64,000 bases of DNA, taken from positions 29,578,464 to 29,642,463 of the forward strand of contig NC_068985.1 in the NCBI RefSeq assembly GCF_001194135.2, written 5' to 3'. The notes under the pieces are model-generated. The model was not told where the DNA came from. It did not search any database and saw nothing but the letters and a program-made list of their open reading frames with translations. Below are positions 3,461 to 43,107 of the stretch, piece after piece. Position numbers and translations under genes: made by a program. Numbering within the stretch: position 1 is the stretch's first letter; the number at the start of each line of letters is the position of its first letter. The stretch comes from Octopus bimaculoides (Eukaryota).

Positions 3461-6400
3461 CAAATAAATTTTGGATATCCTCTTCAGTAGTATTGTAGGG
3501 TGGACCTAAAGAAACATGAAGATATAAATCATTATTGAATATGATATGCTAAATTCCTTTCATGAACTTGTGAATTTTGTCTCCTTATTCTCTATATAGA
3601 TTTACATGTAGCTTTTCATATCAGCATTAATGGTATGTTTTAGGAAATTCTGCATAAATAGGAGCGAATTTGGTAGACAGTAACAATGCAGAAGTATGCC
3701 ATATACATATCATAATCATTACCATTATCACTTCATGTCCATTTTCCATGCTTGCATAGGTTGTGTGGTGTGTATTTCAGTCTCTCTGTTCGACAATTGC
3801 TGTTGGCTTGTTCATGTCTCTGTAACTTAGCAGTTCAGCAAGAGAATGGTACACTAAATACACTAAACTGAAAAATAATTACTGGGTCAATTTCATTTGC
3901 TAAATCCTTCAAGATGGTGCCCCAGAACAGTTGCAGTCCAATGACAGAAACCAGCAAAGGAGTCAAAGGAAAAGGAGTCTATATCTGCTTAGCTGTGAAG
4001 AGATTTAAGCCCTGGTTGTTCAGCTCTAGCTTCATGAGGAGTAGATGAAGAGGAAATTTTACTCTGGTTATGACTACAGGTCACTATTGTTGTTTGTTGT
4101 CCTTACAGACGTATGTAATACTGAACACACTCTGTGTGGCATACATGCAGCTCTTGCAGAGTACTTTACTATCATAGCTCTTGCAGGGTACTTTACTGCA
4201 ATATTTAGGAAGTGTGGCATCTTGAGGAAGTATCTACAATCATAGTCTCAGATTTACCAATGCTTTTCAAGTGAAATTTGGTAAATAGAAATTATACAGA
4301 AGCAAGTCTCCCACCATCACCAACACAATTGCTGCTTTTGCATCATAGATACAATCCATCTAATACTGAAACCCTTCTATGCAGTCTTTGACTACCCTAT
4401 TTCACTTTTTAACCATTTTGTCATATGTGTGTGTATGTTAACATTGCTTATATACTACATAAGACAAAGTCAAGTAACTTGGTGATTCAATGTGTAAAAA
4501 TATGGAATAAAGTTCCTTAACTGGAAATAAGAGTTGACACCAGGAAAGGCATGTGGCCATAGAAAACTGCCACAAAATGTCTCATTCCAACCATGCAAGC
4601 ATGGAAAAAGCAATTACAATAGTGATAATGATAATGGGGTATGATTTGAGGTGGATTTGGTGGCTATTTCTAGTAGATTAAATGATCACATAAAACCTCC
4701 CTCATTGGTCCATGTATTTAAGCATGCTGTTCCGTTTTTAACTGCAGTGTATATTTTGCACATTCACTGCACATATTGACTGTGCGTATTTACTATACAT
4801 ACCATGTTTCTATCATTTCTTTCACTTAGGACACACTGTTCACTCTTATATTTCCATTATTTCACCTCATTTCTCCTCCACCTTCCTATCTCTAATCATA
4901 GACCAATGCATGAAATCTTTCTCAGTCTTTGCCAATTTTCTTTCAAACAATTTTAACCATTCCATTAAAGCTCCCCACCTACTTCCCTCACACTATTTCT
5001 TCTCCAAATCCAACGTTGTGTGTATTTATTTCATTCTCTAATGTGTCCCTTTTTCTACAGTCCATACGTAATCATCTCTCACCACTTCCCTTCCATTTCA
5101 ACTGACCTGGCTCTTGCTAATACTTTTCACTGCTCCTCACCCTCATTTTACTTCTTCACACATTACTCTATTTCCATAATACACTGTCCTTTTCCTCTCC
5201 TCCCACCATACAAACACCCTACACTGCTCTGTNNNNNNNNNNNNNNNNNNNNNNNNNNNNNNNNNNNNNNNNNNNNNNNNNNNNNNNNNNNNNNNNNNNN
5301 NNNNNNNNNNNNNNNNNNNNNNNNNNNNNNNNNNNNNNNNNNNNNNNNNNNNNNNNNNNNNNNNNNNNNNNNNNNNNNNNNNNNNNNNNNNNNNNNNNNN
5401 NNNNNNNNNNNNNNNNNNNNNNNNNNNNNNNNNNNNNNNNNNNNNNNNNNNNNNNNNNNNNNNNNNNNNNNNNNNNNAAATATACTCAAATATAAAATGG
5501 AGGATTTTTTTTCTTTTACAGTGTCCCTCAAAAATGAAAGGTCCTTATTTTTAAGTCTTTTTGGAAAGTGTTTCATGTTTACTTAGAAATTTATATGAAC
5601 TTCAATATAAGTGGTTCATATTCTTGTGAGGGATGATTTTCAAAGAAAGGAAAATCTCACCATATATTCAAGTGGTTATAGTGTATCTTGCTCTATCATT
5701 CTTCATTTACCTGGAAATAACGAAGGGTCATACTGCATTGCGGAAATCATATAGCGACAGTCAGGGGAAAGTAACCCTTTTATCACCTGGGCATACCTAA
5801 ATGCAACAACAACAACAATTATATCTTTCAAAATAAAATATTTTCTCTTTATACTGTTGAAGTTCAGAGGAAAGAATAAAGAAAAGAAAATTTTAAAAAA
5901 AAGTAATTCAATTGCATTTTTTAAATACTCCTGATATTGGATTCAAATTTTGGCTAAAAACACCCATGTTTCCAGAGGTGAATTATTGAAACCCCAAAGA
6001 ATTCCTCTTAACACATGGCTATGATGCTCCCTCACTACTTCTGCTCATGATCAGAGATACACATAACATCATCCATTAAGGGACATGCTCAACTGGTTAA
6101 AGTCAAGCAACCGACAAGCAAATCTGCGATATTAAGCAGAATATTTGCTGTAGCCCATCTTTTATACCAAGACAAAACAATGTACATAACACTTTTAATC
6201 AGTTAAGATCAGAAGCCATGAGAGCCACTGCCTGGTACTGCATCCGGGCATTTATTATTATTATTATTGAGTGGGAGACGTACATGCCATCACAGTGAGA
6301 CTGGGGTAAAATGTATGAAGCCCAGGATACCCATCATGACTACCCATCTGATAAGGGTACACAAGGCACATGCATCACAACTATATGTGCGTGACATGGT

Positions 6401-9400
6401 GAGCTCATATCAAGATTAACAGTGCATGACCTTGCAGGTGGGGCCCAGTTAGAATTTTCTTCAGGTTGAGTAGCCCATCCCGCTCAAATGGTCCTTGAAT
6501 AAGGGTTGTTTAAGGATGATGAATGAAATACCCATGTTTCCAGAGGTGAATTATCCAAACCCCAAAGAATTCCTCTCAACACATGGCTATGATACTCCCC
6601 ACTGCTTCTGGTCATGATTAGAGATACAGGTATCATCATCCATTAAGGGACATGCTCAACTGGTTAAGGTCGAACAACCGACAAGCAAATCTGCGGTATT
6701 AAGCAGAATATTTGCTGTAGCCCATCTTTTATACGAAGACAAAATATCATTATTATTATCACCATTATTATTATTATTAATATTATTACTATTATTAAGG
6801 TAGCGAGTTAGCAGAATCATTAGCATGCCGGGCTAAATGCTCACCAACATTTGATCCATCCTTGTTCTGAGTTCAAATTCCGCCATGGTCAACTTTGCCA
6901 TACCTACTTTTGGGGTTGATAAATTAAGTACCAGTGAAACACTGGGGTTGATGTAATTGATTAGTGCTCTGCCCCAAAATTTCACTATGCAAGAAGGTTT
7001 TCTTATAATTAATCAATATGAATGACAGTTAAGTCAAATATGCAAATACAATCATTCATCAACAGGTGCTATGCGTAGTATACTTAAAATCAGATGGCCC
7101 GAACACATAAGCAATATGGAGCTATGGCAAAGAATGAATCAAGTTTCAATTAGGGAGCAAATATTTAAGAAAAAGTGGAAGTGGATTGGTAACATAATTA
7201 GAAAGGACACACCAAATGTAGCGAAAAGTGCTTTACAGTGGAATCCGGATGGATATAGGAAGAGGGATAGGCCTAAGAACTCGTGGCGTAATTCAACACA
7301 AAAGGAACTAGAGAAAGGGGGACATTCATAGCAGAGTATAAGTACAGAAGCGAAAACTATTGTGACATGGAATTCTATTATAAGTGGCCGATACTCTGCA
7401 TTGGAGAATTACAGGCAAGAAAGAAAATATATTACCATCATTAGTAATATTATGCAATTAACATATATTATATCATCATGACTATGTAATTATGTTGTTG
7501 TCATTAAACAATTATTACCAACCTTTCTCTGGTTTTGGGGCTGATAGCAACAAGAGCTCCTCGATCCCAAATAGCATTAAACTGTCCTTCAAAATCCCTG
7601 TGATTTGGCAGAAAAGAAAAAGAAAAATTAATTGCAAGATTTATTACAATTGGTTGAAATGTAAAGCACTTCTAATTATATTCTGGAAGAAAAGAAATAA
7701 CCTATTTTTACTTCCTTTATTTTAGTTCAGTTAAAGGAAGGCCTGGAAGGAATTACTGCAAGTGAAATAAATGTCAGAGATGCTTTGCCCCATGCAGAAA
7801 CTAGGAGCTACTTCCTGTACACATCACATGAATGGGGCAGTAAGGACTGAAGTAGCCTTTGTCTGAAAAAGGATTCCATCTGCAGTTCCTTGTCAACCAC
7901 CACCACTTTNNNNNNNNNNNNNNNNNNNNNNNNNNNNNNNNNNNNNNNNNNNNNNNNNNNNNNNNNNNNNNNNNNNNNNNNNNNNNNNNNNNNNNNNNNN
8001 NNNNNNNNNNNNNNNNNNNNNNNNNNNNNNNNNNNNNNNNNNNNNNNNNNNNNNNNNNNNNNNNNNNNNNNNNNNNNNNNNNNNNNNNNNNNNNNNNNNN
8101 NNNNNNNNNNNNNNNNNNNNNTAATAATAATTAACAATCATTGTAAATTAAAGAAGAAAGCAAAACAGCCACATTCATTAATAAAATAACATCTAATTAT
8201 ATTTTATCAAAATTTAAATAGATAAATTAATAATAACTGTCGTCATTGTCCATTTTTCTCTGCTTGGACACTGAAAAGGTCAGCAACCTGTAGAAAATCT
8301 GCCTCGATAAAATCCATCTGATTTCATGCAAGCAAAGAAAAATAGAAGCTGAATGATGATGATGATGCAAATGAGGATCTCTAATTATCAAATGGCTAAT
8401 TAATACATGTAGCTGATATAGAATAAAGATATGTAGCTGGCATGGAATAAATGCTACAAAGCACTTTTATTCAGTTTATCAATTTACGAGCAATTCCTTT
8501 CTCGCATCTGTCCCAAATCAATACCATTGGCATTTCTCTCTGAAGATTTTTTTCTACAACAGGAGGAAATTGAAATTCTTGGACATGAGAAACAGCTACC
8601 ACAGCCACTACTACATCACCACCAATACTGCCCTTCCTGTTGCCAACTCTCATCTGTTTCCAAACAAGTTAATATTTCCCCATATCCAGACATCATGTGA
8701 TCACGTGATATACATCACTGGTTACAATGTGCTCCTCATCATTTTAGCTTTCAAATGATACCATCCCATTGGCTGGGCGAGCAGGCCAATGTCCACAATT
8801 GATATTGGAAATGAATGACATTGCTTCTTTGACAGTGACACACATTTACAACTACAACATGATGTTAAGTCAGGGAGAGACAAACCCATGCACCACCACA
8901 CACATACACACAACTGGCTTTTTTTAAGCTCTAGGCTATAGGAGATTCCTATAAGGTTGCTATTCACCCCTGATTGGAACTCTCCCGTATGACATGTATG
9001 CATGCTCAGTGACTTGCTTTAACTTCCGCAGACGCAAATACTGCTGTATATGCAGCCACTATAGAGGGAAGAATGTAGACGGCAAAGTTATTTCACTACA
9101 CAGATATCCTGCAAATGAAGCTATTCGTTGTATTTGGCTTCAGAGATCAAGACTTGTGAGGAAAGACTTTGTTTACACTGCAAATAGCCAAATGTGTTGG
9201 CAGCATTTCGTCAATTTTAATGGACCATCGAAAGATCACTCCTTGCCATCTGTTTTTCCAAACAAAGTATTTAAAATATCAGTAAGTGCATGATCATATA
9301 CGCAGTTAGTAGATGAGAGAAATGTCTCTTTGATTTATCTCCTCATTAACAGATTAGAACATGTTAAAATTCAAGAGAGAAANNNNNNNNNNNNNNNNNN

Positions 9401-12400
9401 NNNNNNNNNNNNNNNNNNNNNNNNNNNNNNNNNNNNNNNNNNNNNNNNNNNNNNNNNNNNNNNNNNNNNNNNNNNNNNNNNNNNNNNNNNNNNNNNNNNN
9501 NNNNNNNNNNNNNNNNNNNNNNNNNNNNNNNNNNNNNNNNNNNNNNNNNNNNNNNNNNNNNNNNNNNNNNNNNNNNNNNNNNNNNNNNNNNNNNNNNNNN
9601 NNNNNNNNNNNNNNNNNNNNNNNNNNNNNNNNNNNNNNNNNNNNNNNNNNNNNNNNNNNNNNNNNNNNNNNNNNNNNNNNNNNNNNNNNNNNNNNNNNNN
9701 NNNNNNNNNNNNNNNNNNNNNNNNNNNNNNNNNNNNNNNNNNNNNNNNNNNNNNNNNNNNNNNNNNNNNNNNNNNNNNNNNNNNNNNNNNNNNNNNNNNN
9801 NNNNNNNNNNNNNNNNNNNNNNNNNNNNNNNNNNNNNNNNNNNNNNNNNNNNNNNNNNNNNNNNNNNNNNNNNNNNNNNNNNNNNNNNNNNNNNNNNNNN
9901 NNNNNNNNNNNNNNNNNNNNNNNNNNNNNNNNNNNNNNNNNNNNNNNNNNNNNNNNNNNNNNNNNNNNNNNNNNNNNNNNNNNNNNNNNNNNNNNNNNNN
10001 NNNNNNNNNNNNNNNNNNNNNNNNNNNNNNNNNNNNNNNNNNNNNNNNNNNNNNNNNNNNNNNNNNNNNNNNNNNNNNNNNNNNNNNNNNNNNNNNNNNN
10101 NNNNNNNNNNNNNNNNNNNNNNNNNNNNNNNNNNNNNNNNNNNNNNNNNNNNNNNNNNNNNNNNNNNNNNNNNNNNNNNNNNNNNNNNNNNNNNNNNNNN
10201 NNNNNNNNNNNNNNNNNNNNNNNNNNNNNNNNNNNNNNNNNNNNNNTTTAGTAGAGTTTAAAAAAATGCAATACTTACTTTGAAAATTTAAACATATCCA
10301 TGCAATATAGTTTGATTTTCCCATCTTTGCTCTAGATGAAAGATAAAATTCAAATGAAATACTTATTGAAACAATTTTTGAACAGCTAACTTCATTTTTC
10401 TGGATTTCTTTACTATAATATTATAATTTCAGTTCTTAAGTTGCCATTTATTATAAACTCATTAGTATTCTGATCACTCTGTCAAATATGATTGCTTATT
10501 TTATTCTCATCATTCTGTATTACTCATGCATTGTCTCATAGCTTCGAGATTCCAGTGCTGTGATTGTTTCTTTTTAGAATGACATTGTAGGGAAGGTGAT
10601 AGAGGCTGGATCTGACCAGTTTGAACATAAAACACAGAATATTTCAGCCAGATTTGACCGGTTTAAATGCAAAACAACTAAGCATCATGTATGTGTAAAT
10701 GCACTTAAGGTGAGAATGAACTCACAAACACCACCACCACCAAAATGAATATTTACTGTAAAGAGTTTTCCTGTGTTGTCCTTTAATTCTTCAACAGTAT
10801 ATTCCAAATTCTGGTCTGTAAAGAATTCCTGGAAAGCTTGTTCTGCAATATCAACTCCAACAACATTATGCCCTTTATCTGCTAATCTGAAAAATAAACA
10901 AATTACACATGTATATATATGCATCATCATCATCAACATCGTTTAACATCCACCTAAATTTATACACACACATCACTGGAGATAATGTTCTGTTGGATCC
11001 TCATAAATTTATTGGGTGAGGTAAAAACAAGAGCAGAGAAGGAGTTCCAGAGGGATGTAAGGCTGAGAAAAGGATTGGAAACAGTATTTATTACAGGATG
11101 AGAAGTTGCATCTCAATGGGTGATTGCTAAAAAGGGACATCATTTTTATTAGAAGTTGTTCTCATTACTTGGAAGTAGATCAGCTCCCATTAGCAAGCTC
11201 TTGAACAAGTATTTCAGCATGTGGGTAACCTACACCCTTGACACAGAGCCACTGTGTCTATGTTGCTACTGGTATTTACAGAATACTAATGCAAAAGATT
11301 TCCAATCAAAGACCTGCCGTTAGTTAATGAAGAAGCTTGAATCCATAAGTAATGGCCTTGGAAGCTATTGCATCTTTCAGACGGTGCATAAAACTTGTGG
11401 ACTATTTAGTATTAATTAGTGATNNNNNNNNNNNNNNNNNNNNNNNNNNNNNNNNNNNNNNNNNNNNNNNNNNNNNNNNNNNNNNNNNNNNNNNNNNNNN
11501 NNNNNNNNNNNNNNNNNNNNNNNNNNNNNNNNNNNNNNNNNNNNNNNNNNNNNNNNNNNNNNNNNNNNNNNNNNNNNNNNNNNNNNNNNNNNNNNNNNNN
11601 NNNNNNNNNNNNNNNNNNNNNNNNNNNNNNNNNNNNNNNNNNNNNNNNNNNNNNNNNNNNNNNNNNNNNNNNNNNNNNNNNNNNNNNNNNNNNNNNNNNN
11701 NNNNNNNNNNNNNNNNNNNNNNNNNNNNNNNNNNNNNNNNNNNNNNNNNNNNNNNNNNNNNNNNNNNNNNNNNNNNNNTGCTGCTTTTTTTTATAAGGTG
11801 TTCAAGTAATCTCCTAACTTCAGGATCATGTTATTGAGTCACTGTTATTCAAAGACAATACTTACTTTTTCATATCTACAGATTTCCCACAGAGGGGAAA
11901 CAAAATTTTTATTCCATTTCTTCCATCAATAAATTTGTCCAAATGTTTCTCAAGCGATCTTAAAGACAAAGGAAAAGAACAGCAAAAATAAACAATTATT
12001 TCAATAATATTCAATACAAATAATATTTTTTTTTGACAGAGTACCATGCCAATTTTTTTGACAGAGTACCATCTGATTGTGAGAACAATGACTGCAAAAT
12101 GTATTTGCTAGCAAGGAAAAGAAAACAGACATTAAACAAATAAATTAATTTTCATGTAACAGAAATAGTGGATTGACCCCTCTAATTCTTGTTTCCCTTC
12201 ATCTTCTCCCTACCCCTCTTACATGCCACCCCTTCATTTCTGTTACCATTTGCTGACAACACTACTTCTCTCTCTCTCTCTGTCTCACTTGGAAGAAAAG
12301 GTAAGGGCGAAAGAATGGTAATTAGACTTAGCAAACTCTTCTAAGAACTTTACTTATAGGTTAACCCATTTGAAACCAACCCACCAGAGTTTGACCCTCA

Positions 12401-13830
12401 TTTTATGATACAAATTTCTCATTTTAACCCTTTAACTTTTAAAGTGGACATATCTGGCCAAAATGTTCTACTTACTTTATGTTCAAACTGGCCAGATCTA
12501 ACATCTCACACCTACCCTGAATGTCATTTTGAACATAAACAAACGCATCATCAAAATCTCAAGGTTATAAGATAATGCAGGATAAATTCAAGACAATCAT
12601 CATCATCCTCTTCCTTTTCCTCTTTATCATCAGCATTTAGCATCTGCTTTCCATGCTAGCATGGGTTAGATGGCTTGTTTGAAACTGCTAAACTGGAAAG
12701 CTGCACCAGGTTCCAATCTGATTTAGCATGGTTTCTACAGCTGGATGCCCTTCCTAAATGCCAACCACTCCGTCTGACAGAATAATCTGAACACTAAAGG
12801 GTAAAGTGATCTAAATAAAAAGTTTCTTTTAAAATTTCATGTTGATTTATGTTTCAAACATCATTTTAATTACTGCAAAGTTATTTTATTATTAAACTCT
12901 TCATTATTTTCAGAATTAATTAAAACAAAGACTGTGTATTTTAACAGAAATATGGTAACAAACGAGTTGACTATGATGCAGCATCAGTGATGTCATCATC
13001 ATCATCCTCATCATCGTCGTCGTTTAACGTCCGCTTTCCATGCTAGCATGGGTTGGACGATTTGACTGAGGACTGGTGAAACCAGATGGCTACACCAGGC
13101 TCCAATCTGATTTGGCAGAGTTTCTACAGCTGGATGCCCTTCCTAATGCCAACCACTCAGAGTGTAGTGGGTGCTTTTACGTGCCACCCGCACGAAGGCC
13201 AGTCAGGAGGTACTGGCAACGGCCACGCTCAAAATGGTGTATTTTAAGTGCCACCTGCACAAGAGCCAGTCCATGGGCACTGGCAACGATCTCGCTCGAA
13301 TGTCCTTACACATGCCGCGGACACAAGTGCCGACAGGAAATAGTCATCCCTCAGCATCCTTATCAATTCAAGACATGTAAGGGAGCCTCTAGGCAGTCAC
13401 CTATGTGTTAGAAGTCGCAGATGAGCCTCCCTCAAATAACACTGCTATCTTATAAAGGGTAGATCACCTGTGCTATGTAGCTCTTAAACAATAAAAAAAA
13501 CAGCCCCTGGGATCATATCTTGGGTCTAGTGGGACTGACTTTAGGTCTGTCATAAGTTTAAAGGCTCATTAGGTCAAAGTTTATTTCAGTTTCCATGGCA
13601 TATGAAAATAACTAAATAGTATGGCAACACAATCATGGCAAAACTAGACAGTTACAACTTGAGCCAAATGTGGTGCTTGATTAAGTTAACTAGTTAAAAG
13701 ATAATTGAGTAGCTTACATGTGCATTTCCTCCCTGTGGAAAGGAATATTTCTAGTGGTCCACCGATTGATCCAGTAACCATTTTCATCAAATTCGGCATC
13801 AGAGGTAGCTTTCTTTTCACTCTCAGTCAT
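3461..13830 (-). CDS. TPMT: Thiopurine S-methyltransferase-like gene, copy A (7 coding exons visible; canonical last exon not seen, possibly in gap 3048-3147)
   Basis: GT-AG exons 13830-13718, 11958-11866, 10886-10757, 10331-10279, 7597-7523, 5796-5711, 3505-3461 (113/93/130/53/75/86/45 nt) splice in frame. Motifs: [54 protein letters not shown]. Exon sizes and phases match human TPMT as recalled (93/133/53/75/86/45). Confidence 0.95.
4800..5232 (+). mobile_element. Decayed Penelope-like element (GIY-YIG endonuclease remnant), left-arm copy
   Basis: Broken reading gives SKSNVVCI...C, FHFN*PG and LILLLHTL, resembling PLE endonuclease motifs (SSNVVY.I.C, HFN.PGH, LIF.LGTL). Mirrored at 40310-40800. 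Confidence 0.45.
7013..7425 (+). mobile_element. RTE-type LINE C-terminal fragment, copy-A-specific
   Basis: LRSILKIRWPEHISNMELW...WKWIGNIIRK...ALQWNPDGYRKRDRPKNSW. Absent at the matching site of the right arm (~38990). Confidence 0.8.
8994..9293 (+). CDS. THAP (C2CH) zinc-finger domain ORF/exon, probably the 5' part of a THAP-transposase element
   Basis: CCIC...ISLHRYP...IW...MCWQHF...LPSVFP has the C-x2-C/C-x2-H ligands plus the conserved P, W, F, P of THAP domains. Donor gtaagt at 9282 in phase 0, followed by an 865-N gap. Confidence 0.8.
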   Translation: MYACSVTCFNFRRRKYCCICSHYRGKNVDGKVISLHRYPANEAIRCIWLQRSRLVRKDFVYTANSQMCWQHFVNFNGPSKDHSLPSVFPNKVFKISVSA

Positions 13831-14479
13831 ATTTGGTTCTTCAAAACAAACAGAAGAATAAATTCAAAAAGGAACAACACACATTTATTAAAAGACTGAT
13901 TCAAGAGTGTCAAAGTGATAAATTTTTCAGGCAAGAATTTACCCTTCTTCACTAAGTGCTTTTTTCATCATTACTTTGGTAAGTATGGCAGAGTTCATTC
14001 TTTGCTGAAGAGAGCTAATCCGATTTAAATGTTTGGAGTTATCTCCCTTATGTACTGAAATAACACTTGCCATTGAATTAACGTTGACTTTTCATCAGTA
14101 GATTATTTATAATTATCTTTCTGCAACTTGTGACATTAAATACATTAACATTAATTCAAATAAGATAAGCCAATATGAAGCTGTGTGGTCTTAGTTAGGG
14201 TGTTGGATTCATGATTATAAGGTTGTGGTTTCAATTTCAAGACTGGCTAGCATTCTTGAACAAAACACTTCATTCTGCACTGTTTCACTCCTCTCAGCTC
14301 CTTTCTCTCTAACTCTCTCCCACCTTCCTCTCCATCCCTGTGCTACTGGTGTAGTCAAGTACCTCCTCTATAATAAGACAACTATCCCTGTCCCTCTGTT
14401 TTATCTGAGCCGCTTCCCTGGCATATAGCCACTTTCCACAGTTCAACTCCCTCTCGCAGCTGAGAGGTTTTTGTCTTGT

Positions 14480-14860
14480 AAGGTACATGGTGACCCCACT
14501 GGTGCTGGTGTCACAAAAAAAGCACCTGTGGTGGTTGCATGTAAATAGCATCTGTGCTGGTGCCACATAAAAAGCACCAAGTACACTCCATAAAATGGTT
14601 GGCATTAGAGAGGGCATCCAGCTGGAGAAACCATGCCACAACAGATAAATGGGGCCTGGTGCAGCTCTCCAGCTTACCAGCTCCTGTCAAACTGGGAGCC
14701 GTCCAGACTCCAATTGTCTGTTGTGGTACGGTTTCTACAGTTGAATGCCCTTCCTAATGCCAACCACTTAACAAAATGTTCTGGGTGCATTTTACATGCC
14801 ACCAGCGCAGGTGCATTTTCAAAGCACCAGCAAGGGTGCTTTTCATGTTGCACCGGCAAC
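14480..14860. repeat. Two fragments of the (ATG)n-tail retroposon in inverted orientation
   Basis: ggttggcattagagagggcatccagctggagaaacc (~14597) is mirrored by ggtttctacagttgaatgcccttcctaatgccaacc (~14730). Confidence 0.7.
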
Positions 14861-14978
14861 TGAAAGAACAAGCCTTATCACCCCCACCTTGAGTGATAGC
14901 GTATTGTCCAAAAATCAAGATCTTATTTTAAAGTTGCCATGGAGTTTTTTAAAATAAATAAATAAAATGGATATTTGT

Positions 14979-15025
<47 letters not shown>

Positions 15026-15036
15026 ACCGGATAAAT

Positions 15037-30700: not shown

Positions 30701-31002
30701 ACTGCTTTCGTAGCCGAACGGAAGAAAACCCTGAAGTATCGCGACCTGACAGTGAACTACCTCTTCCAACCTGTGACGTTTGAGATGCTCGGAGGAACTG
30801 GGCCACTAACCTCGAAGTTCTTGTCAACATTGGCAGCTCGCTTCACCGAGGTGTCACGTGATGCCAGTCAGAACGCTTGGCTTTCCCAACGCCCTAGCCT
30901 CGCCATCGCCCGTGGTCATGCTGCTAGCGTGCTGGCTTGCTTCAGTTTGTTCCGTTAAACTTTGCGGTATGCAACCAGTTGCTATGATAAAAAATTAAAA
31001 AA
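27778..31002 (+). mobile_element. Frameshifted CRE-clade non-LTR retrotransposon: PHD finger, RT, zinc knuckle and restriction-like endonuclease
   Basis: PHD CVLC...IKCHLC...YHRSC...WTC; RT motifs GIDGLRP, RPIAVG, LKLDIKNAF, GVQQGDPL, WYLDD; C-terminal CRCG, HTELN, KRPDG, LIWDAT; A-rich tail. Spread over several frames. Confidence 0.9.
29721..30044 (+). mobile_element. Solo LTR inserted in the CRE element
   Basis: Starts TGTAGTA and ends TACTA(C)A, contains AATAAA, 5-bp TSD gtgct/atgct. Absent from the paralogous copy at ~26405. Confidence 0.65.
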
Positions 31003-34000: not shown

Positions 34001-34027
34001 TCTTCTGTTTGTTTTGAAGAACCAAAT

Positions 34028-36519
34028 ATGACTGAGAGTGAAAAGAAAGCTACCTCTGATGCAGAATTTAATGTAAATGATTACTGGATCAATCGGTGGA
34101 ACACTGGAAAAATCCGTTTCCACAGGGAGGAAATGCACATGTAAGTTACTCAATTATCTTTTAACTAATTAACTTAATCAAGCACCACATCTGACTCAAG
34201 TTGTAACTGTCTAGTTTTGCCATGGTTGTGTTGCCATACTATTTATTTAGTTATTTTCATATGCCATGGAAACTGAAATAAACTTTGACCTAATGAGCCT
34301 TTAAACTTATTACAGACCTAAAGTCAGTCCCACTAGACCCAAGATATGATCCCAGGGGCTGTTTTTTTATTGTTTAAGAGCTACATTGCACAGGTGATCT
34401 ACCCTTTATAAGATAGTGTTATTTGAGGGAAGCTTATCTGCTACTTCTAACACATAGGTGACTGCCTAGAGGCTCCCTTACATGTCTTGAATTGATAAGG
34501 ATGCTGGGTGACCAGCTGAGGGATGACTATTTCCTGTCACATCACTGATATTGCATCATACCTATAGTCAACTTCTTTGTTACCATATTTCTGTTAAAAT
34601 ACACAGTTTTTATTTTAATTAATTCTGAAAATAATGAAGAATTTAATAATAAAATAACTTTGCAGTAATTAAAATGATGTTTGAAACATAAATCAACATG
34701 AAATTTTAAAAGAAACTTTTTATTTAGATCATTTTACCCTTTAGCGTTCAGATTATTCTGTCAGACGGAGTGGTTGGCATTTAGGAAGGGTATCCAGCTG
34801 TAGAAACCATGCTAAATCAGATTGGAACCTGGTGCAGCTTTCCAGTTTAGCAGTTTCAACCAAGCCATCTAACCCATGCTAGCATGGAAAGCATATGCCC
34901 TTCATCACCTTAAGCCTTACTTGTTTCCCTGAGTTAAGGATTTATCTTTTATTTCCTCTTGCATCTTCAGCAGTATGAAGCTGGGAGATGTTAACAAGCA
35001 TCACATTTTCTCACCTCAATACTTTTCATGCAAAGCATCGATACAGGCATACAATCTGAAGCCTCTATTCATGCACATTTGTATGCTTGCACATGTACAC
35101 ACACGCATACTGCTACATTTGTAGTGCTGCAGAGATCCACAAAACCCCAGGCTGGATACCATTGAAGGGTTTAGCTGTTATTACCAGGGGTTTGTGTGAT
35201 CTCAGAAAGGCTCCCTATCTTGTTCTTGGTTTCTAATTCTGCCAGGATTTCTTTGCTACTTGTTCCTACATTACCGACAAAACAAGTACCAGTAACATAT
35301 TGAGGTTCAATCTCTTGATTACACTTTTCCCTTTAAATAACTGGCATGGTACTCTGTCGAAAAAAAATTATTGTTGTTTTTATTGAATATTATTGAAATA
35401 ATTTTTTTTTTTTTGCTGTTCTTTTCCTTTGTCTTTAAGATCACTTGAAAAACATTTGGACAAATTTATTGATGGAAGAAATGGAATAAAAATTTTCTTT
35501 CCCCTCTGTGGGAAATGTGTAGATATGAAAGGGTAAGTATTGTCTTTGAATAACAGTGACTCAGTAACATGATCTTGAATCCTCATCCTGTAATAAATAC
35601 TGTTTCCAATCCTTTTCTCAACCTTACATCCTTCTGGAACTCCTTCCCTACTCTTGTTTTTCCCTCACCCACTAAATTTATGAGGATCCAACAGAACATT
35701 ATCTCAAGTCATGTGTGTGTGCGTGCGTAAATATAGGCAGATGTTAAACGATGATGACAATGATGATGATGCATATATATATATAGGTGTAGTTTGTTTA
35801 TTTTTCAGATTAGCAGATAAAGGGCATAATGTTGTTGGAGTTGACATTGCAGAACAAGCTTTCCAGGAATTCTTTACAGACCAGAATTTGGAATATACTG
35901 TTGAAGAATTAAAGGACAACACAGGAAAACTCTTTACAGTAAATATTCACTTTTACAGTAGAAGCTTTTATAAAAAGTTGAAATAATGGTGCAGGTGTAG
36001 CTGTGTGGTATAAAATTTGCTTTCCAACCACACAGTTTGAAGTTCAGTCCCAGAGTGTGGCACTGTAGCCTCATCTATATCTCCAGGTTGACCAAAGCCT
36101 TGTGAGTGGATTGGATTTAGTTGACAAAAACTGAAAGAAAAATCCTGTCATAGATTTATATATCATCATTAAACATCCATTGTTCACACTGCCATGGGTT
36201 AGACATCAGCATCGTTTAACGTCCGCTTTCCATGCTAGCATGGGTTGGACAATTTGACTGAGGACTGGTGAATCGGATGGCTGCACCAAGCTCCAATCTG
36301 ATCTGGCAGAGTTTCTACAGCTGGATGCCCTTCCTAACGCCAACCACTCCGAGAGTGTAGTGGGTGCTTTTACATGCCACCAGCATGAGGACCAGTCACA
36401 CGGTACTGGCAACGGCTACGCTCAAAATGGGGTTTTTTACATGCCACCTGCACAGGAGCCAGTCCAGTGCCACTGGCAAACGACCTCGCTTGAATGATTT
36501 TCTAATGTGCCAAGTGCCA

Positions 36520-36564
<45 letters not shown>

Positions 36565-39500
36565 CATACATACATACACACATACTTATGTAACCACATG
36601 TGTGCTATTGGTGATTGTTTTCCTTTGTCTTCCTCTTCTCTTGGACTTTCCTCTGTCTCCTGTTTTTGAAGAAGAGCTTTGCTCGAAACATAAAACACCC
36701 TTTTTTTTCCTTCTCCGAGCGTCTTATTAATAAGTTGTATGTACCACGTCCTCGTGTTGTTATTTTTTTTTTTGTCCTTTTTATTCAGCAGCAGTAGTGT
36801 ATTGATGGTACAGTGGGTAGTTGCATTGACATTCTATTTGAAATATAATTTTGTGAGTTCATTCTGACCTTAAGTGCATTTACACATACATGATGCTTAG
36901 TTGTTTTGCATTTAAACCGGTCAGATCTGGCTGAAATATTCTATGTGTTTTATGTTCAGACTGGTCAGATCCAGCCTCTATCACCTTCCCTACAATGTCA
37001 TTCTAAAAAGAAACAATCACAGCACTGGAATCTCGAAGCTATGAGACAATGCATGAGTAATACAGAATGATGAGAATAAAATAAGCAATCATATTTGACA
37101 GAGTGATCTGAATACTAATGAGTTAATAATAAATGGCAACTTAAGAACTGAAATTATAATATTATAGTAAAGAAATCCAGAAAAATTAAGTTAGCTGTTC
37201 AAAAATTGTTTCAATAAGTATTTCATTTGAATTTTATCTTTCATCTAGAGCAAAGATGGGAAAATCAAACTATATTGCATGGATATTTTTAAATTTTCAA
37301 AGTAAGTATTGCATTTTTTAAAACTCTACTAAATTTTCAATATTTGAACATGGACATAGAGGAATGACTGAGTAGCTAGCTTTGCAACCACATGGTTCCA
37401 GGTTCAGTCCCTCAGTGTGCACCTTGGGCAAGTGTCTCCTACTATAGCCTGGAGCTTAAAAAAAGCCAGTTGTGTGTGTTTGTGTCTCCCTGACCTGACA
37501 TCATGTTGTAGTTGTACATGAGTGTCACTGTCAAAAAGACTATGTAATTCATTTCTAATATTAAGTGGAAATATATCTGGATATCAGCCTACTTGCTTAG
37601 CCAATGGTGTGGCATCATTTGAAAGCTAAAATGATGAGGAGCACATTGTAACCAGTGATGTATATTACATGGTCACATGATGTCTGGATATGGGGAAATA
37701 TTAACTTGTTTGGAAACAGATGAGAGTTGGCAACAGGAAGGGCAGTATTGGTGGTGATGTAGTAGTGGCTGTGGTAGTTGTTTCTCATGTCCAAGAATTT
37801 CAATTTCCTCCTGTTGTAGAAAAAAATCTTCAGGGAGAAATGCCAATGGTGTTGATTTGGGACAGATGCGAGAAAGGAATTGCTCTAAATTGATAAACTG
37901 AATAAAAGTGCTTTGTAGCATTTATTCCATGCCAGCTACATATCTTTATTCTATATCAGCTACATGTATTAATTAGCCATTTGATAATTAGAGATCCTCA
38001 TTTGCATCATCATCATCATTCAGCTTCTATTTTTNNNNNNNNNNNNNNNNNNNNNNNNNNNNNNNNNNNNNNNNNNNNNNNNNNNNNNNNNNNNNNNNNN
38101 NNNNNNNNNNNNNNNNNNNNNNNNNNNNNNNNNNNNNNNNNNNNNNNNNNNNNNNNNNNNNNNNNNNNNNNNNNNNNNNNNNNNNNNNNNNNNNNNNNNN
38201 NNNNNNNNNNNNNNNNNNNNNNNNNNNNNNNNNNNNNNNNNNNNNNNNNNNNNGGTGGTGGTTGACAAGGAACTGCAGATGGAATCCTTTTTCAGACAAA
38301 AGCTACTTCAGTCCTCACTGCCCCATTCATGTGATGTGTACAGGAAGTAGCTCCTAGTTTCTGCATGGGGCAAAGCATCTCTGACATTTATTTCACTTGC
38401 AGTAATTCCTTCCAGGCCTTCCTTTAACTGAACTAAAATAAAGGAAGTAAAAATAGGTTATTTCTTTTCTTCCAGAATATAATTAGAAGTGCTTTACATT
38501 TCAACCAATTGTAATAAATCTTGCTATTAATTTTTCTTCTTTTTCTTTTCTGCCAAATCACAGGGATTTTGAAGGACAGTTTAATGCTATTTGGGATCGA
38601 GGAGCTTTTGCTGCTATCATCCCCAAAACCAGAGAAAGGTTGGTAATAATTGCTTAATGACAATAACATAATTACATAGTCATAATGATATAATATATAA
38701 AAATAAATGCACCCTTTTAAAGCCTAGCCAGGCTCATGGTCCGGGTTTCAATGGCGTATGTGTTCCCCAACTGGACGGGACGCCAGTCCATCGCAGCGTT
38801 ACTCATTTTTGCCAGCTGAGTGGAGTGGAGCAACGTGAAATGAAGTGTTTTGCTCAAGAACACAACGCGTCGCCCGGTCCAGGAATTGAAACCACAATCT
38901 TACGATCATGATGCTGACACCCTAACCACTAAGCCATGCGTCTCCACGATATAATATGTTAGTTGCATAATATTACTAATGATAGTAAAATATACTAATT
39001 AATTGTAAGAAAACCAGAGCACTAATTACATCAACCCCAGTGTTTCACTGGTACTTAATTTATCAACCCCAAAAGTAGGTAATGCAAAGTTGGCCATGGT
39101 AGAATTTGAACTCAGAATGTAAGGATGGATGAAATGTTGGTGAGCATTTCGCCGGGCATGCTAATGATTCTGTTAACTCGCTACCTTAATAATAATAATA
39201 ATAATAGTAATAATAATATTAATAATAATAATAATAATGGTGATGATAATAATAATAATAATATTTTGTCTTCGTATAAAAGATGGGCTACAGCAAATAT
39301 TCTGGGCTTCATATATTTTACCCCAGTCTCACTATGATGGCATGCACTGCTCTCACTCAATAATAATTATAATAAATGCCCTGATGCAATACCAGGCATT
39401 GGCTCTCATGGCTTCTGATCTTAACTGATTGTACATTGTTTTGTCTTGGTATAAAAGATGGGCTACAGCAAATATTCTGCTCAATACCACAGATTTGCTT

Positions 39501-42500
39501 GTCAGTTGCTTGATCTTAACCAGTTGAGCATGTCCTTTAATGGATGATGTTATGTGCATCTCTGATCACGAGCAGAAGTAGTGGGGGAGCATCATAGCCA
39601 TGTGTTGAGAGGAACTCTTTGGGGTTTGAATAATTCACCACTAGAAACATGGGTGTTTTGTGCCAAAATTTGATTCCAATATTAGAAGTATTTAAAAAAT
39701 GCAATTGAATTAATTTTTTTTGTTTATTTTCTTTTATTTAAAAATATAATTGTTGCTGTTGTTGTTGTTGCATTTAGGTATGCCCAGGTGATAAAAGGGT
39801 TACTTTCCCCTGACTGTCACTATATGATTGCCACAATGCAGTATGACCTTTCCTTATTTCCAGGTAAATCAAGAATGGTAGAGCAAGATACACTATAACC
39901 ACTTGAATATATGGAGAGATTTTCCTTTCTTTGAAAATCATCCCTCACAAGAATATGAACCACTTATATTGAAGTTCATATAAATTTCTAAGTAAACATG
40001 AAACACTTTCCAAAAAGACTTAAAAATAAGGACCTTTCATTTTTGAGGGACACTGTAAAAGAAAGAAAATCCATTTTATATTTGAGTATATTTATATAGT
40101 GTTTACTTGCCTTCTTTTTACAGTTATTTGTATTTCTTAATTACTTTTTTATTAGTTTTAGTCTTGAACATTTCACATCAGCATTGATATATTAGATAGA
40201 ACCTGGAATCTAAAGAAGTTGGTGGTCTCCATTGACAAACGTTATTTCATAAAAGTTCATGGACAAAAAGTATATCAAATTACAATGAGTTGATTTACTA
40301 TGAGGAGTGAAAAACCCAATGTTTCAGACAGTTGCCCTTCTTTGAGGATACAGAATAGAGAGGCTGATAGCACAGTGTCAGAAAAATAAATGGAAAAGAA
40401 GGGACAGAGCAGTGTAGGGTGTTTGTATGGTGGGAGGAGAGGAAAAGGACAGTGTGAGTATTATGGAAATAGAGTAATGTGTGAAGAAGTAAAATGAGGG
40501 TGAGGAGCAGTGAAAAGTATTAGCAAGAGCCAGGTCAGTTGAAATGGAAGGGAAGTGGTGAGAGATGATTACGTATGGACTGTAGAAAAAGGGACACATT
40601 AGAGAATGAAATAAATACACACAACGTTGGATTTGGAGAAGAAATAGTGTGAGGGAAGTAGGTGGGGAGCTTTAATGGAATGGTTAAAATTGTTTGAAAG
40701 AAAATTGGCAAAGACTGAGAAAGATTTCATGCATTGGTCTATGATTAGAGATAGGAAGATGGAGGAGAAATGAGTTGAAATAATGGAAATATAAGAGTGA
40801 ACAATGTGTCCTAAGTGAAAGAAATGATAAGTAGAAGCATGGTATGTATAGTATATACGCACAGTCAATATGTGCAGTGAATGTGCAAAATATACACTGC
40901 AGTTAAAAGCGGAACAGTATGCTTAAATACATGGACCAATGAGGGAGGTTTTATGTGGTCATTTAATCTGCTAGAAATAGCAACCAAATCCACCTCAAAT
41001 CATACCCCATTATCATTATCACTATTGGACTTGCTTTTTCCATGCTTGCATGGGTGGGATGAGACATTTTCCTGGTGTCAGCTCTTATTTCCAAGTAAGG
41101 AATTTATTCTATGTCTTCACACATTGAATCACCAAGTCGCTTGACTTTGTTTAATGTAGTATATAAGCAATGTTACCATTACCCTAATGGTATCAATATG
41201 AAGATATGCAGAGCACCTCCCCCCCCCCACATACACACAAACACACTTATGACAAAATGGTTAAAAAGTGAAATAGGATAGACAAAGACTGCATAGAAGG
41301 GTTTCAATATTAGATGGATTGTATCCATGATGCAAAAGCAGCGATGGTGTTGGAGGTGGTGGTGGGTGACTTGCTTCTGTATAATTTCTATTTACCAAAT
41401 TTCACTTGAAAAGCATTGGTAAATGTGAGACTATGATTGTAGACACTTCCTCAAGATGTCACACTTCCTAAATAGCAAAACTACGGCAGTAAAGTACCCT
41501 GCAAGAGCTGCATGTATGCCACACAGAGTGTGTTCAGTATTACATACGTCGGCAACCAGAGGAAAATTTCCTCTTCATCTACTCCTCATGAGACTAGAGC
41601 TGAACAACCAGGGCTTAAATCTCTTCACAGCTAAGCAGACGTAGACTCCTTTTCCTTTGACTCCTTTGCTGGTTTCTGTCATTGGACTGCAACTGTTTTG
41701 GGGCACCATCTTGAAGGATTTAGCAAATGAAATTGACCCAGTAATTATTTTTCAGTTTAGTGTATTTAGTGTACCATTCTCTTGCTGAACTGCTAAGTTA
41801 CAGAGACATGAACAAGCCAACAGCAATTGTCGAACAGAGAGACTCAAATACACACCACACAACCTATGCAAGCATGGAAAATGGNNNNNNNNNNNNNNNN
41901 NNNNNNNNNNNNNNNNNNNNNNNNNNNNNNNNNNNNNNNNNNNNNNNNNNNNNNNNNNNNNNNNNNNNNNNNNNNNNNNNNNNNNNNNNNNNNNNNNNNN
42001 NNNNNNNNNNNNNNNNNNNNNNNNNNNNNNNNNNNNNNNNNNNNNNNNNNNNNNNNNNNNNNNNNNNNNNNNNNNNNNNNNNNNNNNNNNNNNNNNNNNN
42101 NNNNNNNNNNNNNNNNNNNNNNNNNNNNNNNNNNNNNNNNNNNNNNNNNNNNNNNNNNNNNNNNNNNNNNNNNNNNNNNNNNNNNNNNNNNNNNNNNNNN
42201 NNNNNNNNNNNNNNNNNNNNNNNNNNNNNNNNNNNNNNNNNNNNNNNNNNNNNNNNNNNNNNNNNNNNNNNNNNNNNNNNNNNNNNNNNNNNNNNNNNNN
42301 NNNNNNNNNNNNNNNNNNNNNNNNNNNNNNNNNNNNNNNNNNNNNNNNNNNNNNNNNNNNNNNNNNNNNNNNNNNNNNNNNNNNNNNNNNNNNNCTTTTG
42401 TTAGGCATGCCATTCAGAAAGTCCCGTGGGTCACAGTTCGCCCACAACTGAACTATACCAATACAATAATCATTTTCACAAAGTTTTTACTAAATTTCCT

Positions 42501-43107
42501 GCTCAGATTCAAGTCAGAGTACATTTTACTCTATTATCATTATTCTGTCTTCTCTGATTTTTACTAAACACTCTCTCTAAGGTCATCAGGATAATCAACT
42601 ATTTAGTTTTGAATATCTAAATACTTTAATAGTGTTCGCATTAAAGCTAAGCAAGGAACATTCTAGAATTTGATTGTAATGGTTATTAACCCAACAAATA
42701 ATTAAAAAAAAAACAATTTCCATATTGTTCCTCATTGGACCAACTAATGTGTCAGGATGGTGTGATTTTGAACTTTTAAGTTGTAGGTGAACTATGCAAT
42801 ATTCTTAATTATCAACAAGTATTATGCAGCAAGTACAATTGTACAGCTATTTTGAATAGCCAAAATTACTTCATCAAACTACAACATTATGTATTTCAAA
42901 ACTTTGTTTCACTTTGAAATGCTTTACCAAGCAAGTACAATGTATCAGCTGTCATATATTAATTATTATGTACTTGATATATATTTCTATTTGAAAGGTG
43001 ATATATGCAGTGTTGAAGAAATTGATGAAAATGACTACGGTCCACAGTTCAAAGGAAGGGGATTGGATGTGATTTTTGAACTGATCTACTTTTTGAAAAT
43101 TAAATGA
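34028..43107 (+). CDS. TPMT: Thiopurine S-methyltransferase-like gene, copy B (7 coding exons visible; exon 7 expected in gap 41885-42394)
   Basis: GT-AG exons 34028-34140, 35440-35532, 35809-35938, 37249-37301, 38564-38638, 39778-39863 and last exon 42998-43107 ([10 protein letters not shown]...[15 protein letters not shown]). Phases are compatible; no stops or frameshifts seen. Confidence 0.95.
38697..38947 (-). mobile_element. Full-length tRNA-derived SINE, copy-B-specific
   Basis: Head gtggagacgcatggcttagtggttagggtg..., 10-bp TSD gatataatat (38687-38696 and 38948-38957); empty site in copy A at ~7462. Confidence 0.85.
40310..40800 (-). mobile_element. Decayed Penelope-like element with degenerate hammerhead at its 3' end
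   Basis: Mirror of 4800-5232. On the minus strand it ends cctcaaagaagggcaactgtctgaaacattg, a mutated CTGAAGA...GAAAC motif. Confidence 0.5.

What the first reader, a model, noticed from the sequence alone, without database searches (positions are those of the whole stretch)
3461..43107. Head-to-head pair of apparently intact TPMT paralogues made by an inverted segmental duplication
Seen: two TPMT-like genes on opposite strands with start codons ~20 kb apart, identical exon sizes, and no stops or frameshifts in any visible exon. Each arm has private TE insertions with empty sites in the other arm. Known: TPMT is single-copy in human; it methylates aromatic/heterocyclic thiols and selenium compounds, and its physiological role in invertebrates is unclear. 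Inference: a retained duplicate pair in a probable cephalopod could be a diversifying small-molecule methylation or detoxification system.
Basis: partly seen in the sequence, partly recalled or inferred. Interest (0 to 1): 0.75.

Follow-up and report, generated by a model that had tools for sequence, protein, structure and literature searches.

The report
Head-to-head octopus TPMT gene pair
Two neighbouring, oppositely oriented copies of a thiol-methylating enzyme gene (TPMT) in the Octopus bimaculoides genome are real and already annotated; they belong to a small cephalopod gene family whose copies stay alike by exchanging sequence, which is a tidy case of gene-family evolution but not a new kind of system.

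Summary
The window is Octopus bimaculoides chromosome contig C5:29,578,464-29,642,463. It carries an imperfect palindrome with arms at about 2841-19208 and 27392-45675 and an 8-kb spacer. The arms differ by 4.5% in aligned bases. Each arm holds a TPMT gene (PF05724, 156-177 bits). The genes lie head-to-head, with ATGs 20,198 bp apart, identical exon sizes and canonical splice sites.

"Intact" is true only for the visible exons. The left copy's last exon (E8) falls in the 100-N gap at 3048-3147. The right copy's E7 falls in the gap at 41885-42394. RefSeq already annotates both genes, each with a false C-terminus caused by these gaps.

The pair is not an assembly artefact. A gapless O. sinensis assembly has the same arrangement, A(-) B(+) C(+), with the A and B start codons 23.2 kb apart. 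A cuttlefish also has a head-to-head pair, 21.8 kb apart.

O. bimaculoides has at least four TPMT copies. Paralogues are mosaically more alike within a species than between species, and O. sinensis shows 100%-identical tracts of 0.5-1.5 kb. Together with paralogue-specific residues shared across species, this points to an old duplication homogenised by gene conversion.

The right copy evolves faster, at dN/dS of about 1. Functional diversification is plausible but not shown.

The parts
2841..19208 (.). Left arm of the palindrome. It contains the 100-N join at 3048-3147, which hides about 4.7 kb.
   Evidence: Collinear inverted HSP chain to the right arm. Collinear with the O. sinensis gene A region.
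19209..27391 (.). Spacer between the arms. Its central part, 21782-24879, is inverted relative to O. sinensis.
27392..45675 (.). Right arm of the palindrome
13718..13830 (-). L TPMT coding exon 1, starting at the ATG at 13830
   Evidence: Matches RefSeq protein P0037.
11866..11958 (-). L exon 2 (FPLCGK SAM-binding loop)
   Evidence: AG/GT
10757..10886 (-). L exon 3
   Evidence: AG/GT
10279..10331 (-). L exon 4
   Evidence: AG/GT. The gap at 9383-10246 begins 32 nt past the donor site.
7523..7597 (-). L exon 5 (WDRGAL motif)
5711..5796 (-). L exon 6
3461..3505 (-). L exon 7 (GPPYN)
3048..3147 (-). 100-N scaffold join where L exon 8 is expected
   Evidence: The flanks map to O. sinensis positions 6136 and 10801. 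The 4,664 nt between them include gene A's E8. No L-like E8 exists anywhere in the assembly.
34028..34140 (+). R TPMT coding exon 1, starting at the ATG at 34028
   Evidence: Matches RefSeq protein P0003.
35440..35532 (+). R exon 2
35809..35938 (+). R exon 3
   Evidence: Only 1 difference in 130 nt from L, against 9.7% in the flanking sequence.
37249..37301 (+). R exon 4
38564..38638 (+). R exon 5 ([10 protein letters not shown])
39778..39863 (+). R exon 6
41885..42394 (+). 510-N gap where R exon 7 is expected
   Evidence: The flanks map 675-676 nt apart in O. sinensis A and C, and that interval contains E7. Unplaced contigs C112642 and C42946 carry intact E7 copies.
42998..43107 (+). R exon 8, with the stop codon at 43105-43107
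12994..13331 (.). SINE-like insertion private to L intron 1
   Evidence: Clean empty site in R. The repeat has at least 10 copies in the window.
8945..10246 (.). Insertion private to L intron 4, with a THAP-domain ORF fragment at 8955-9293. Part of it is an assembly gap.
   Evidence: R and O. sinensis have only about 105 nt here. THAP match at E = 2e-5.
35955..36849 (.). Insertion private to R intron 3, made of a SINE-like copy plus a microsatellite
   Evidence: Empty site in L at 10728-10742
27979..30658 (.). Segment upstream of R carrying fragments of a degenerate non-LTR retroelement (RVT_1). It is absent from L but present upstream of O. sinensis gene A.

Best explanation
The window holds two of at least four O. 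bimaculoides paralogues of thiopurine/thiol S-methyltransferase (TPMT, a SAM-dependent class I methyltransferase).

Structure. The two genes sit head-to-head on the arms of an imperfect palindrome with arms of about 18 kb. The palindrome arose by an inverted DNA-level duplication that predates the O. bimaculoides / O. vulgaris-sinensis split. Since then the copies have repeatedly exchanged sequence by gene conversion, including between inverted copies. That is why arm divergence (4.5%) is about half the between-species divergence and varies block by block.

Gene content. Each gene has eight coding exons. All visible exons are open and spliceable. The missing exon of each gene lies in an assembly gap and has not been lost.

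Inferred function. Both genes most likely encode active thiol/selenol S-methyltransferases. Exons 2-4, which encode the conserved SAM-binding core, are held nearly constant. Exon 1 (N-terminal region), exons 5-6 and exon 8 differ between paralogues, which could tune acceptor-substrate preference. The right copy corresponds to the 'C-type' paralogue of O. sinensis/vulgaris at exons 1 and 5, and it is the faster-evolving member.
For: Identity of the genome. The contig length of 127,476,059 equals that of the contig carrying the NCBI O. bimaculoides TPMT proteins. L equals P0037 and R equals P0003 letter for letter, including their read-through tails.

Family.
- PF05724 scores of 177 and 156 bits against a cut-off of 26.
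- The O. sinensis orthologue hits mouse and human TPMT structures at E = 1e-59 to 2e-56 over its full length.
- FPLCGK, GVD and WDRG are retained in both copies.

Reality of the duplication.
- 4.5% mismatch over 8,091 aligned non-coding nt, plus many indels and private TE insertions. Reported heterozygosity is 0.08% (PMC7656900).
- The gapless O. sinensis region has A(-) B(+) C(+), with A and B head-to-head.
- The window's left flank is syntenic with the sequence downstream of A.

Gene conversion.
- Within-species identities exceed between-species identities in every block, and the closest partner changes from block to block.
- O. sinensis has 100%-identical runs: A=C 1,519 nt over E1, B=C 990 nt over E2, and A=B up to 1,062 nt around E5.

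Old paralogy.
- The AAII signature in E5 is shared by R, O. sinensis C and O. vulgaris C.
- Asn25 in E1 is shared by R, C55761 and O. vulgaris C.
- ALVAIS is shared by L and O. vulgaris A.
- O. sinensis A, B and C each pair with an O. vulgaris orthologue in the tree.

Constraint pattern.
- Variable residues per exon: E3 9% and E4 11%, against E1 37% and E6 43%.
- E3 has 1 difference in 130 nt against 9.7% in its flanks, p = 5e-4. E1+E5+E6 show 6.2% against 3.0% in their flanks, p = 0.011, but this grouping was chosen post hoc.
Against: - No transcript, read-depth or enzymatic evidence is available here.
- L E8 and R E7 are unseen, so intactness is unproven.
- L-R dN/dS is 0.75, and the R lineage has 13 nonsynonymous against 3 synonymous derived changes (omega about 1). 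This is what a decaying copy would also show. R has L->F in WDRGAL and P->L in YDP.
- In O. sinensis, exons are on the whole less diverged than their flanks. The excess of exon divergence therefore does not replicate, except weakly at E6.
- The 100%-identical tracts in O. sinensis could in principle be polishing artefacts of a long-read assembly.
- Orthology of L and R to A, B or C cannot be resolved in the tree.
Confidence: 0.75

Rival explanations
1. Assembly artefact. A single TPMT locus was represented twice, by uncollapsed haplotypes or a mis-scaffolded duplicate, and joined in inverted orientation in a gap-rich short-read and Hi-C assembly.
For: The region has 16 N-runs, including 100-N joins at 3048-3147 and 44478-44577. 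Both arms have a gap at the same homologous position in intron 4. Several TPMT fragments are unplaced.
Against: - The arms differ by 4.5% plus kb-scale indels and private TE insertions with clean empty sites. Heterozygosity is 0.08%.
- There are 18 amino-acid differences between the copies.
- The same head-to-head layout is present in a gapless O. sinensis assembly and in a cuttlefish.
- Three orthologous copies are annotated in O. vulgaris.
Confidence: 0.03
2. The pair is real, but the right copy is a decaying duplicate, functionally redundant or already inactive. Only the left copy, or another copy, is the working TPMT.
For: - The R lineage has 16 derived exon changes against 6 in L (binomial p = 0.05), with N:S of 13:3, omega about 1.
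- Overall exon divergence equals non-coding divergence at 4.5%.
- R has substitutions in otherwise conserved motifs, GAL->GAF and YDP->YDL.
- R's branch is three times longer in the tree.
- A cuttlefish paralogue shows similar decay, with WDR->WDH and a C-terminal deletion.
Against: - Seven visible exons covering 660 nt have no stop, no frameshift and all splice sites intact.
- E3 is almost identical to L despite 9.7% flank divergence.
- R-type states (Asn25, AAII, Gly69) are shared with other intact copies or with orthologues in other species, so they are lineage signatures and not random damage.
- The YDP proline is not invariant in molluscs: it is E in scallop and T in cuttlefish.
Confidence: 0.2
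3. Independent recent duplications. O. bimaculoides and the O. sinensis/vulgaris lineage each duplicated TPMT after they split, and happened to produce similar head-to-head layouts. Gene conversion plays no large part.
For: Paralogues are always closer within a species than between species. The O. bimaculoides copies do not resolve with A, B or C in the tree. Argonauta and decapod copies also cluster by lineage.
Against: - The model requires repeated origin of the same orientation and of similar ATG-to-ATG spacing: 20.2, 23.2 and 21.8 kb.
- The mosaic of 100% tracts with alternating partners in O. sinensis shows conversion directly.
- O. sinensis C carries A's E1 exactly, while the O. vulgaris C protein keeps a divergent E1 sharing Asn25 with O. 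bimaculoides R and C55761.
- The AAII and ALVAIS signatures are shared across species.
Confidence: 0.12

Closest known systems
Vertebrate TPMT (human and mouse; PDB 2BZG, 2H11, 2GB4, 3BGD, 3BGI)
   Same: Same Pfam family. The O. sinensis orthologue aligns over its full length to the solved structures at E = 1e-59 to 2e-56. The FPLCGK loop, the acidic residue after strand 2 (GVD/GVE), WDRG and GPP motifs are conserved.
   Different: From my own knowledge, TPMT is single-copy in human. Here there are at least 4 copies in a palindromic or clustered arrangement. The position that the HMMER alignment pairs with the vertebrate Arg of 'EERHK' varies among octopus paralogues: R, W, K or Q. This rests on an alignment with a gap next to it.
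Palindromic or inverted gene pairs homogenised by arm-to-arm gene conversion, such as primate sex-chromosome palindromes and the Drosophila hsp70Aa/Ab inverted pair (from my own knowledge)
   Same: Inverted arms with a unique spacer. Arm identity is higher than expected from the age of the duplication. Conversion tracts form a mosaic. The spacer is inverted relative to a sister lineage.
   Different: Arm identity is only about 95.5% in O. bimaculoides, so homogenisation is patchy. Conversion also involves a third, directly oriented copy and dispersed copies. Parts of the coding sequence (E1, E5, E6) are more diverged than their flanks.
RefSeq models 'probable thiopurine S-methyltransferase' of O. 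bimaculoides, O. sinensis and O. vulgaris
   Same: These are the same genes. L is XP_014778196 / XP_052824204-7. R is XP_014778197-8 / XP_052824208-9. Locus 3 is XP_014777183.2.
   Different: The O. bimaculoides models have false C-termini, reading through into intron 7 (L) and intron 6 (R) because of the gaps. In O. sinensis the separate paralogues are partly annotated as isoforms of overlapping genes, and in O. vulgaris two copies are fused into one 470-aa model.

Membership tests
TPMT family (Pfam PF05724) | Profile match above Pfam's gathering score | tested here: met
   L scores 177 bits and R 156 bits against a cut-off of 26. Exon-wise genomic hits were also found.
TPMT family (Pfam PF05724) | Full-length homology to experimentally solved TPMT structures | tested here: met
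   O. sinensis paralogue B, which is 88-89% identical to L, matches 2GB4, 3BGD and 2BZG at E = 1e-59 to 2e-56 over residues 20-232.
TPMT family (Pfam PF05724) | SAM-binding core motifs (glycine-rich loop FPLCGK, acidic residue in GVD/E) and the WDRG arginine | tested here: met
   Present in L, R and all octopus copies. The assignment of roles to these motifs comes from my own knowledge of TPMT structures.
TPMT family (Pfam PF05724) | Complete open reading frame covering all 8 coding exons | tested here: inconclusive
   Seven of eight exons are visible and open in each copy. L E8 and R E7 lie in gaps.
TPMT family (Pfam PF05724) | SAM-dependent S-methylation of thiol, selenol or halide acceptors | not testable with these tools
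   Requires an enzyme assay.
Palindrome / inverted duplicate with concerted evolution | Two inverted arms of high identity around a unique spacer | tested here: met
   Arms at 2841-19208 and 27392-45675 with 4.5% mismatch, and a spacer of about 8.2 kb.
Palindrome / inverted duplicate with concerted evolution | Paralogues more similar within a species than orthologues are between species, although the arrangement is shared | tested here: met
   Block identity matrices. The head-to-head layout is shared with O. sinensis.
Palindrome / inverted duplicate with concerted evolution | Discrete conversion tracts (mosaic of identical stretches with changing partners) | tested here: met
   Clear in O. 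sinensis, with runs of 0.5-1.5 kb at 100% identity. In O. bimaculoides only block-wise incongruence and blocks at 98% were seen, with no long identical tract.
Palindrome / inverted duplicate with concerted evolution | The duplication predates the species split, shown by trans-specific paralogue signatures | tested here: inconclusive
   The AAII, Asn25 and ALVAIS signatures are shared across species, but the tree does not resolve the O. bimaculoides copies.

The most novel reading that the evidence does not exclude
Coleoid cephalopods have kept a head-to-head TPMT palindrome since before octopuses and cuttlefishes diverged, with start codons about 20-23 kb apart in two octopus species and one cuttlefish. 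Gene conversion holds the SAM-binding core uniform, while selection keeps the N-terminal, exon 5-6 and C-terminal residues different. The result would be a small, diversifying battery of thiol/selenol methyltransferases with distinct substrates.
Probability: 0.15. Interest if true: 0.55.

Novelty: new member of a known kind. Interest (0 to 1): 0.3.

Why it matters
Practical value. The two RefSeq models in this window have wrong C-termini because of gaps, and TPMT copy number in O. bimaculoides is at least 4, not 2. Anyone using these genes for expression or enzymology needs paralogue-aware mapping and a long-read fix of the locus.

Evolutionary value. The locus is a compact example of concerted evolution across inverted and direct duplicates in a cephalopod. 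O. sinensis and O. vulgaris offer a natural comparison: C's exon 1 has been overwritten by A in one species but not the other. There is also a hint that substrate-side exons escape homogenisation.

Limits. This opens no new class of system. The physiological role of invertebrate TPMT remains unknown.

Tried and rejected
- Haplotig or assembly-artefact reading. Rejected on divergence against heterozygosity and on cross-species synteny.
- Unplaced contigs as the missing exons.
  - C23921 (E8) is only about 80% identical to R's E8 region and 78% to O. sinensis A. It is therefore not L's E8 but belongs to a more diverged copy.
  - C42946 (E7) is 90% identical to R's flank and 89% to locus 3, so it belongs to neither.
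  - C112642 (E7, 322 bp) fits inside R's gap but has no overlap with the flanks, so it cannot be assigned.
  - C71703 is 100% identical to C83329 and merely fills its gap.
- Exact look-up of five hypothetical full-length L and R proteins, as a search for spliced transcripts. None is in the collection.
- Literature. No paper combines thiopurine and cephalopod in a relevant way. The Albertin 2015 paper was not held, so the heterozygosity figure comes from PMC7656900.
- Conserved coding element in the spacer that might explain the similar spacing in octopus and cuttlefish. tblastx found none.
- Rfam and tRNA scans of the window. Nothing found.
- Replication of 'exons more diverged than flanks' in O. 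sinensis. Not replicated, except weakly at E6.
- Resolving orthology of L and R to A, B or C by tree. Unresolved.
Full report
WHAT THE WINDOW IS

The window is G000:C5:29,578,464-29,642,463 of a 2.34-Gb assembly with 145,327 contigs. C5 is 127,476,059 bp long. That is exactly the contig length recorded for the NCBI Octopus bimaculoides TPMT proteins. Two RefSeq proteins are reproduced letter for letter by the window, including their aberrant tails. The genome is therefore O. bimaculoides. The window has 16 N-runs, among them two 100-N joins at 3048-3147 and 44478-44577.

THE OBSERVATION

- An inverted repeat is present. A collinear chain of 21 HSPs links 19208-3739 to 27392-41884 at 87-98% identity.
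- A further pair at 2841-3039 / 45675-45479 lies beyond the 100-N joins. The arms are thus about 18 kb long and the spacer about 8.2 kb.
- Over 8,091 aligned non-coding positions the arms differ at 4.5%.
- Each arm carries a TPMT gene. The coding exons, all with AG/GT borders, are:
  - L (minus strand): 13830-13718, 11958-11866, 10886-10757, 10331-10279, 7597-7523, 5796-5711, 3505-3461.
  - R (plus strand): 34028-34140, 35440-35532, 35809-35938, 37249-37301, 38564-38638, 39778-39863, 42998-43107.
- The start codons face each other, 20,198 bp apart. Exon sizes are identical, and no visible exon has a stop or frameshift.
- Private insertions with clean empty sites exist in both arms:
  - a 338-nt SINE-like element in L intron 1;
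  - an insert of about 895 nt in R intron 3;
  - a THAP-bearing insert in L intron 4.

THE GAPS

I compared every gap with a gapless 93-kb O. sinensis region, CM016863.1:34,011,142-34,104,492.

- The flanks of 5233-5477, 7910-8121, 9383-10246, 11424-11778 and 38035-38253 are collinear and in the same orientation. The corresponding O. sinensis intervals (104-833 nt) are intronic and hold no exon.
- The flanks of the 100-N join at 3048-3147 map 4,664 nt apart in O. sinensis. That interval contains gene A's exon 8, so L's last exon is unassembled. No L-like E8 exists anywhere in the assembly.
- The flanks of 41885-42394 map 675 nt apart, and that interval contains exon 7, so R's exon 7 is unassembled.
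- RefSeq's models therefore read through into introns. L (P0037, 227 aa) ends ...NLFGKSIKVTLQSK.... R (P0003, 194 aa) ends ...[14 protein letters not shown].

"Apparently intact" holds for seven of the eight exons in each copy.

NOT AN ARTEFACT, AND NOT ONLY A PAIR

- Reported heterozygosity of O. bimaculoides is 0.08% (PMC7656900). That is far below the 4.5% arm divergence with kb-scale indels.
- O. sinensis has three complete eight-exon TPMT genes: A on the minus strand, B and C on the plus strand. A and B are head-to-head, with ATGs 23.2 kb apart.
- The window's left flank is syntenic with the sequence downstream of A.
- O. vulgaris has orthologues of A, B and C.
- The cuttlefish Acanthosepion pharaonis also has a head-to-head pair, with ATGs 21.8 kb apart and its own inverted repeat.
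- Argonauta hians has two copies on the same strand, 69 kb apart.
- Within O. bimaculoides there are further copies. A partial one lies at C5:39.84 Mb, bounded by a 100-N join. At least one more is on unplaced contigs: C83329 (of which C71703 is an identical gap-filler), C55761, C42946, C112642 and C23921. None is close to 100% identical to L or R.

The minimum is therefore four copies.

CONCERTED EVOLUTION

- In every aligned block, paralogues are closer within a species (about 93-100%) than any copy is to a copy in the other species (about 90-95%). For comparison, genome-wide O. vulgaris / O. bimaculoides similarity is 92.4% (PMC6472339).
- The closest partner changes from block to block.
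- In O. sinensis the mosaic is explicit:
  - A=C at 100% over a 1,519-nt run covering exon 1;
  - B=C at 100% over 990 nt (exon 2) and 702 nt (exon 3);
  - A=B at 100% over runs of 800-1,062 nt around exon 5;
  - A and C nearly identical (99.2-100%, one window 97.1%) across intron 6.
- These tracts include exchanges between inverted copies.
- Paralogue-specific residues are shared across species:
  - WDRGA(L/F)AAII in R, O. sinensis C and O. vulgaris C;
  - Asn25 in R, C55761 and O. vulgaris C;
  - ALVAIS in L and O. vulgaris A.
- O. sinensis C's exon 1 is identical to A's, whereas the O. vulgaris C protein keeps a divergent exon 1 that shares Asn25 with O. bimaculoides R. This looks like a recent A-to-C conversion in O. 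sinensis.

I conclude, by inference, that the inverted duplication predates the O. bimaculoides / O. vulgaris split and that arm similarity is maintained by gene conversion. The protein tree pairs O. sinensis A, B and C with their O. vulgaris orthologues but cannot place the O. bimaculoides copies. That is what such mosaics would be expected to produce.

SELECTION

- L and R differ at 25 of 550 exon positions. By the NG86 method this is 6 synonymous and 19 nonsynonymous changes, giving dN/dS of 0.75. The exon divergence equals the non-coding divergence.
- Polarised against O. sinensis, R has 16 derived changes (13 nonsynonymous, 3 synonymous; omega about 1). L has 6 (4 nonsynonymous, 2 synonymous). 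The binomial p is 0.05.
- Constraint is uneven:
  - Exon 3 has 1 difference in 130 nt against 9.7% in its flanks, p = 5e-4.
  - Exons 1, 5 and 6 together show 6.2% against 3.0% in their flanks, p = 0.011. This grouping was chosen post hoc.
- Among the nine Octopus copies compared, variable residues make up 9-11% of exons 3-4 and 31-43% of exons 1 and 5-8.
- The excess of exon divergence does not replicate in O. sinensis, apart from a weak trend at exon 6.

The data fit either diversification of the substrate side of the enzyme or relaxed constraint on R. They do not decide between the two.

FUNCTION

Both proteins are clear TPMT-family members (PF05724, 156-177 bits). The orthologue aligns to mouse and human TPMT structures at E = 1e-59 to 2e-56. 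The FPLCGK loop, GVD and WDRG motifs are retained. The mechanism I commit to, by homology only, is SAM-dependent S-methylation (or Se-methylation) of small thiols. In the HMMER alignment, the position paired with the vertebrate Arg of 'EERHK' is R, W, K or Q in different octopus paralogues. This hints at different acceptor pockets, but the alignment has a gap next to that position, so it is only a lead.

NOVELTY

The genes are already annotated, though with wrong C-termini. A full-text search found no relevant paper on cephalopod TPMT. The finding is a new member of known kinds: a duplicated small-molecule methyltransferase family, and a palindrome or cluster under concerted evolution. It is useful for annotation and as an evolutionary example, but of modest general interest.

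Noticed in passing
window 57066-58466 (+): An uninterrupted 466-aa open frame encodes a C2H2 zinc-finger protein with about 10 tandem fingers (zf-C2H2 190 bits, zf-H2C2_2 239 bits). It is probably a single-exon member of the large octopus C2H2 expansion.
   Followed up: partly
window 21679-24879: Across the 77-N gap at 21679-21755 the orientation relative to O. sinensis flips. The left flank, 21041-21678, is collinear. The segments 21782-22584 and 22938-23494 match O. sinensis 38911-37563 in reverse, and 23676-24879 matches the B-C intergenic region in reverse. This is either a real flip of the palindrome spacer or a scaffolding error.
   Followed up: partly
window 349-620, 1986-2178, 2814-2981, 12618-12770, 13001-13275, 14554-14803, 34768-34892, 36212-36466, 45954-46070: An interspersed SINE-like repeat of about 270 nt has at least 10 copies in the window at 77-95% identity. 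Two of these are insertions private to one palindrome arm. It gives no tRNA or Rfam match.
   Followed up: partly
window 27597-30958 (+) and 1056-1433 (+): Degenerate non-LTR retroelement fragments carry RVT_1 and PHD-finger ORF pieces interrupted by frameshifts. The copy upstream of R is also present upstream of O. sinensis gene A but is missing from L. L therefore lost it, or R and O. sinensis retain an old insertion.
   Followed up: partly
window 7910-8121 and 38035-38253: Both arms have an assembly gap at the same homologous position in intron 4. This suggests a stretch the short-read assembler could not resolve between near-identical paralogues.
   Followed up: no
G000:C5:39,837,759-39,840,588 (L010/L012) and unplaced C83329, C55761, C42946, C112642, C23921: Additional TPMT copies. 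Locus 3 shows exons 2-5, is open, reads WDRAAL, and is bounded by a 100-N join just upstream of exon 2, so its placement 10 Mb from the pair may be a scaffolding choice. C23921 carries a much more diverged exon 8 (about 80% nt identity) with an open frame.
   Followed up: partly
L024/L026 (Acanthosepion pharaonis CAHIKZ030001235.1:233,434-312,153): In the cuttlefish head-to-head TPMT pair, one copy reads WDHASVV where the other copies read WDRGSLV, has a 3-residue deletion in the last exon, and sits on a long branch. It may be decaying. Upstream non-coding arms are 96% identical, whereas the exon-1 region is 85.5% identical.
   Followed up: partly
L021/L022 (O. sinensis CM016863.1:34,011,142-34,104,492): RefSeq annotates the three O. 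sinensis paralogues as overlapping genes and isoforms that share upstream 5' exons. In O. vulgaris, copies B and C are fused into one 470-aa model (CAI9722665). These annotations conflate paralogues.
   Followed up: partly
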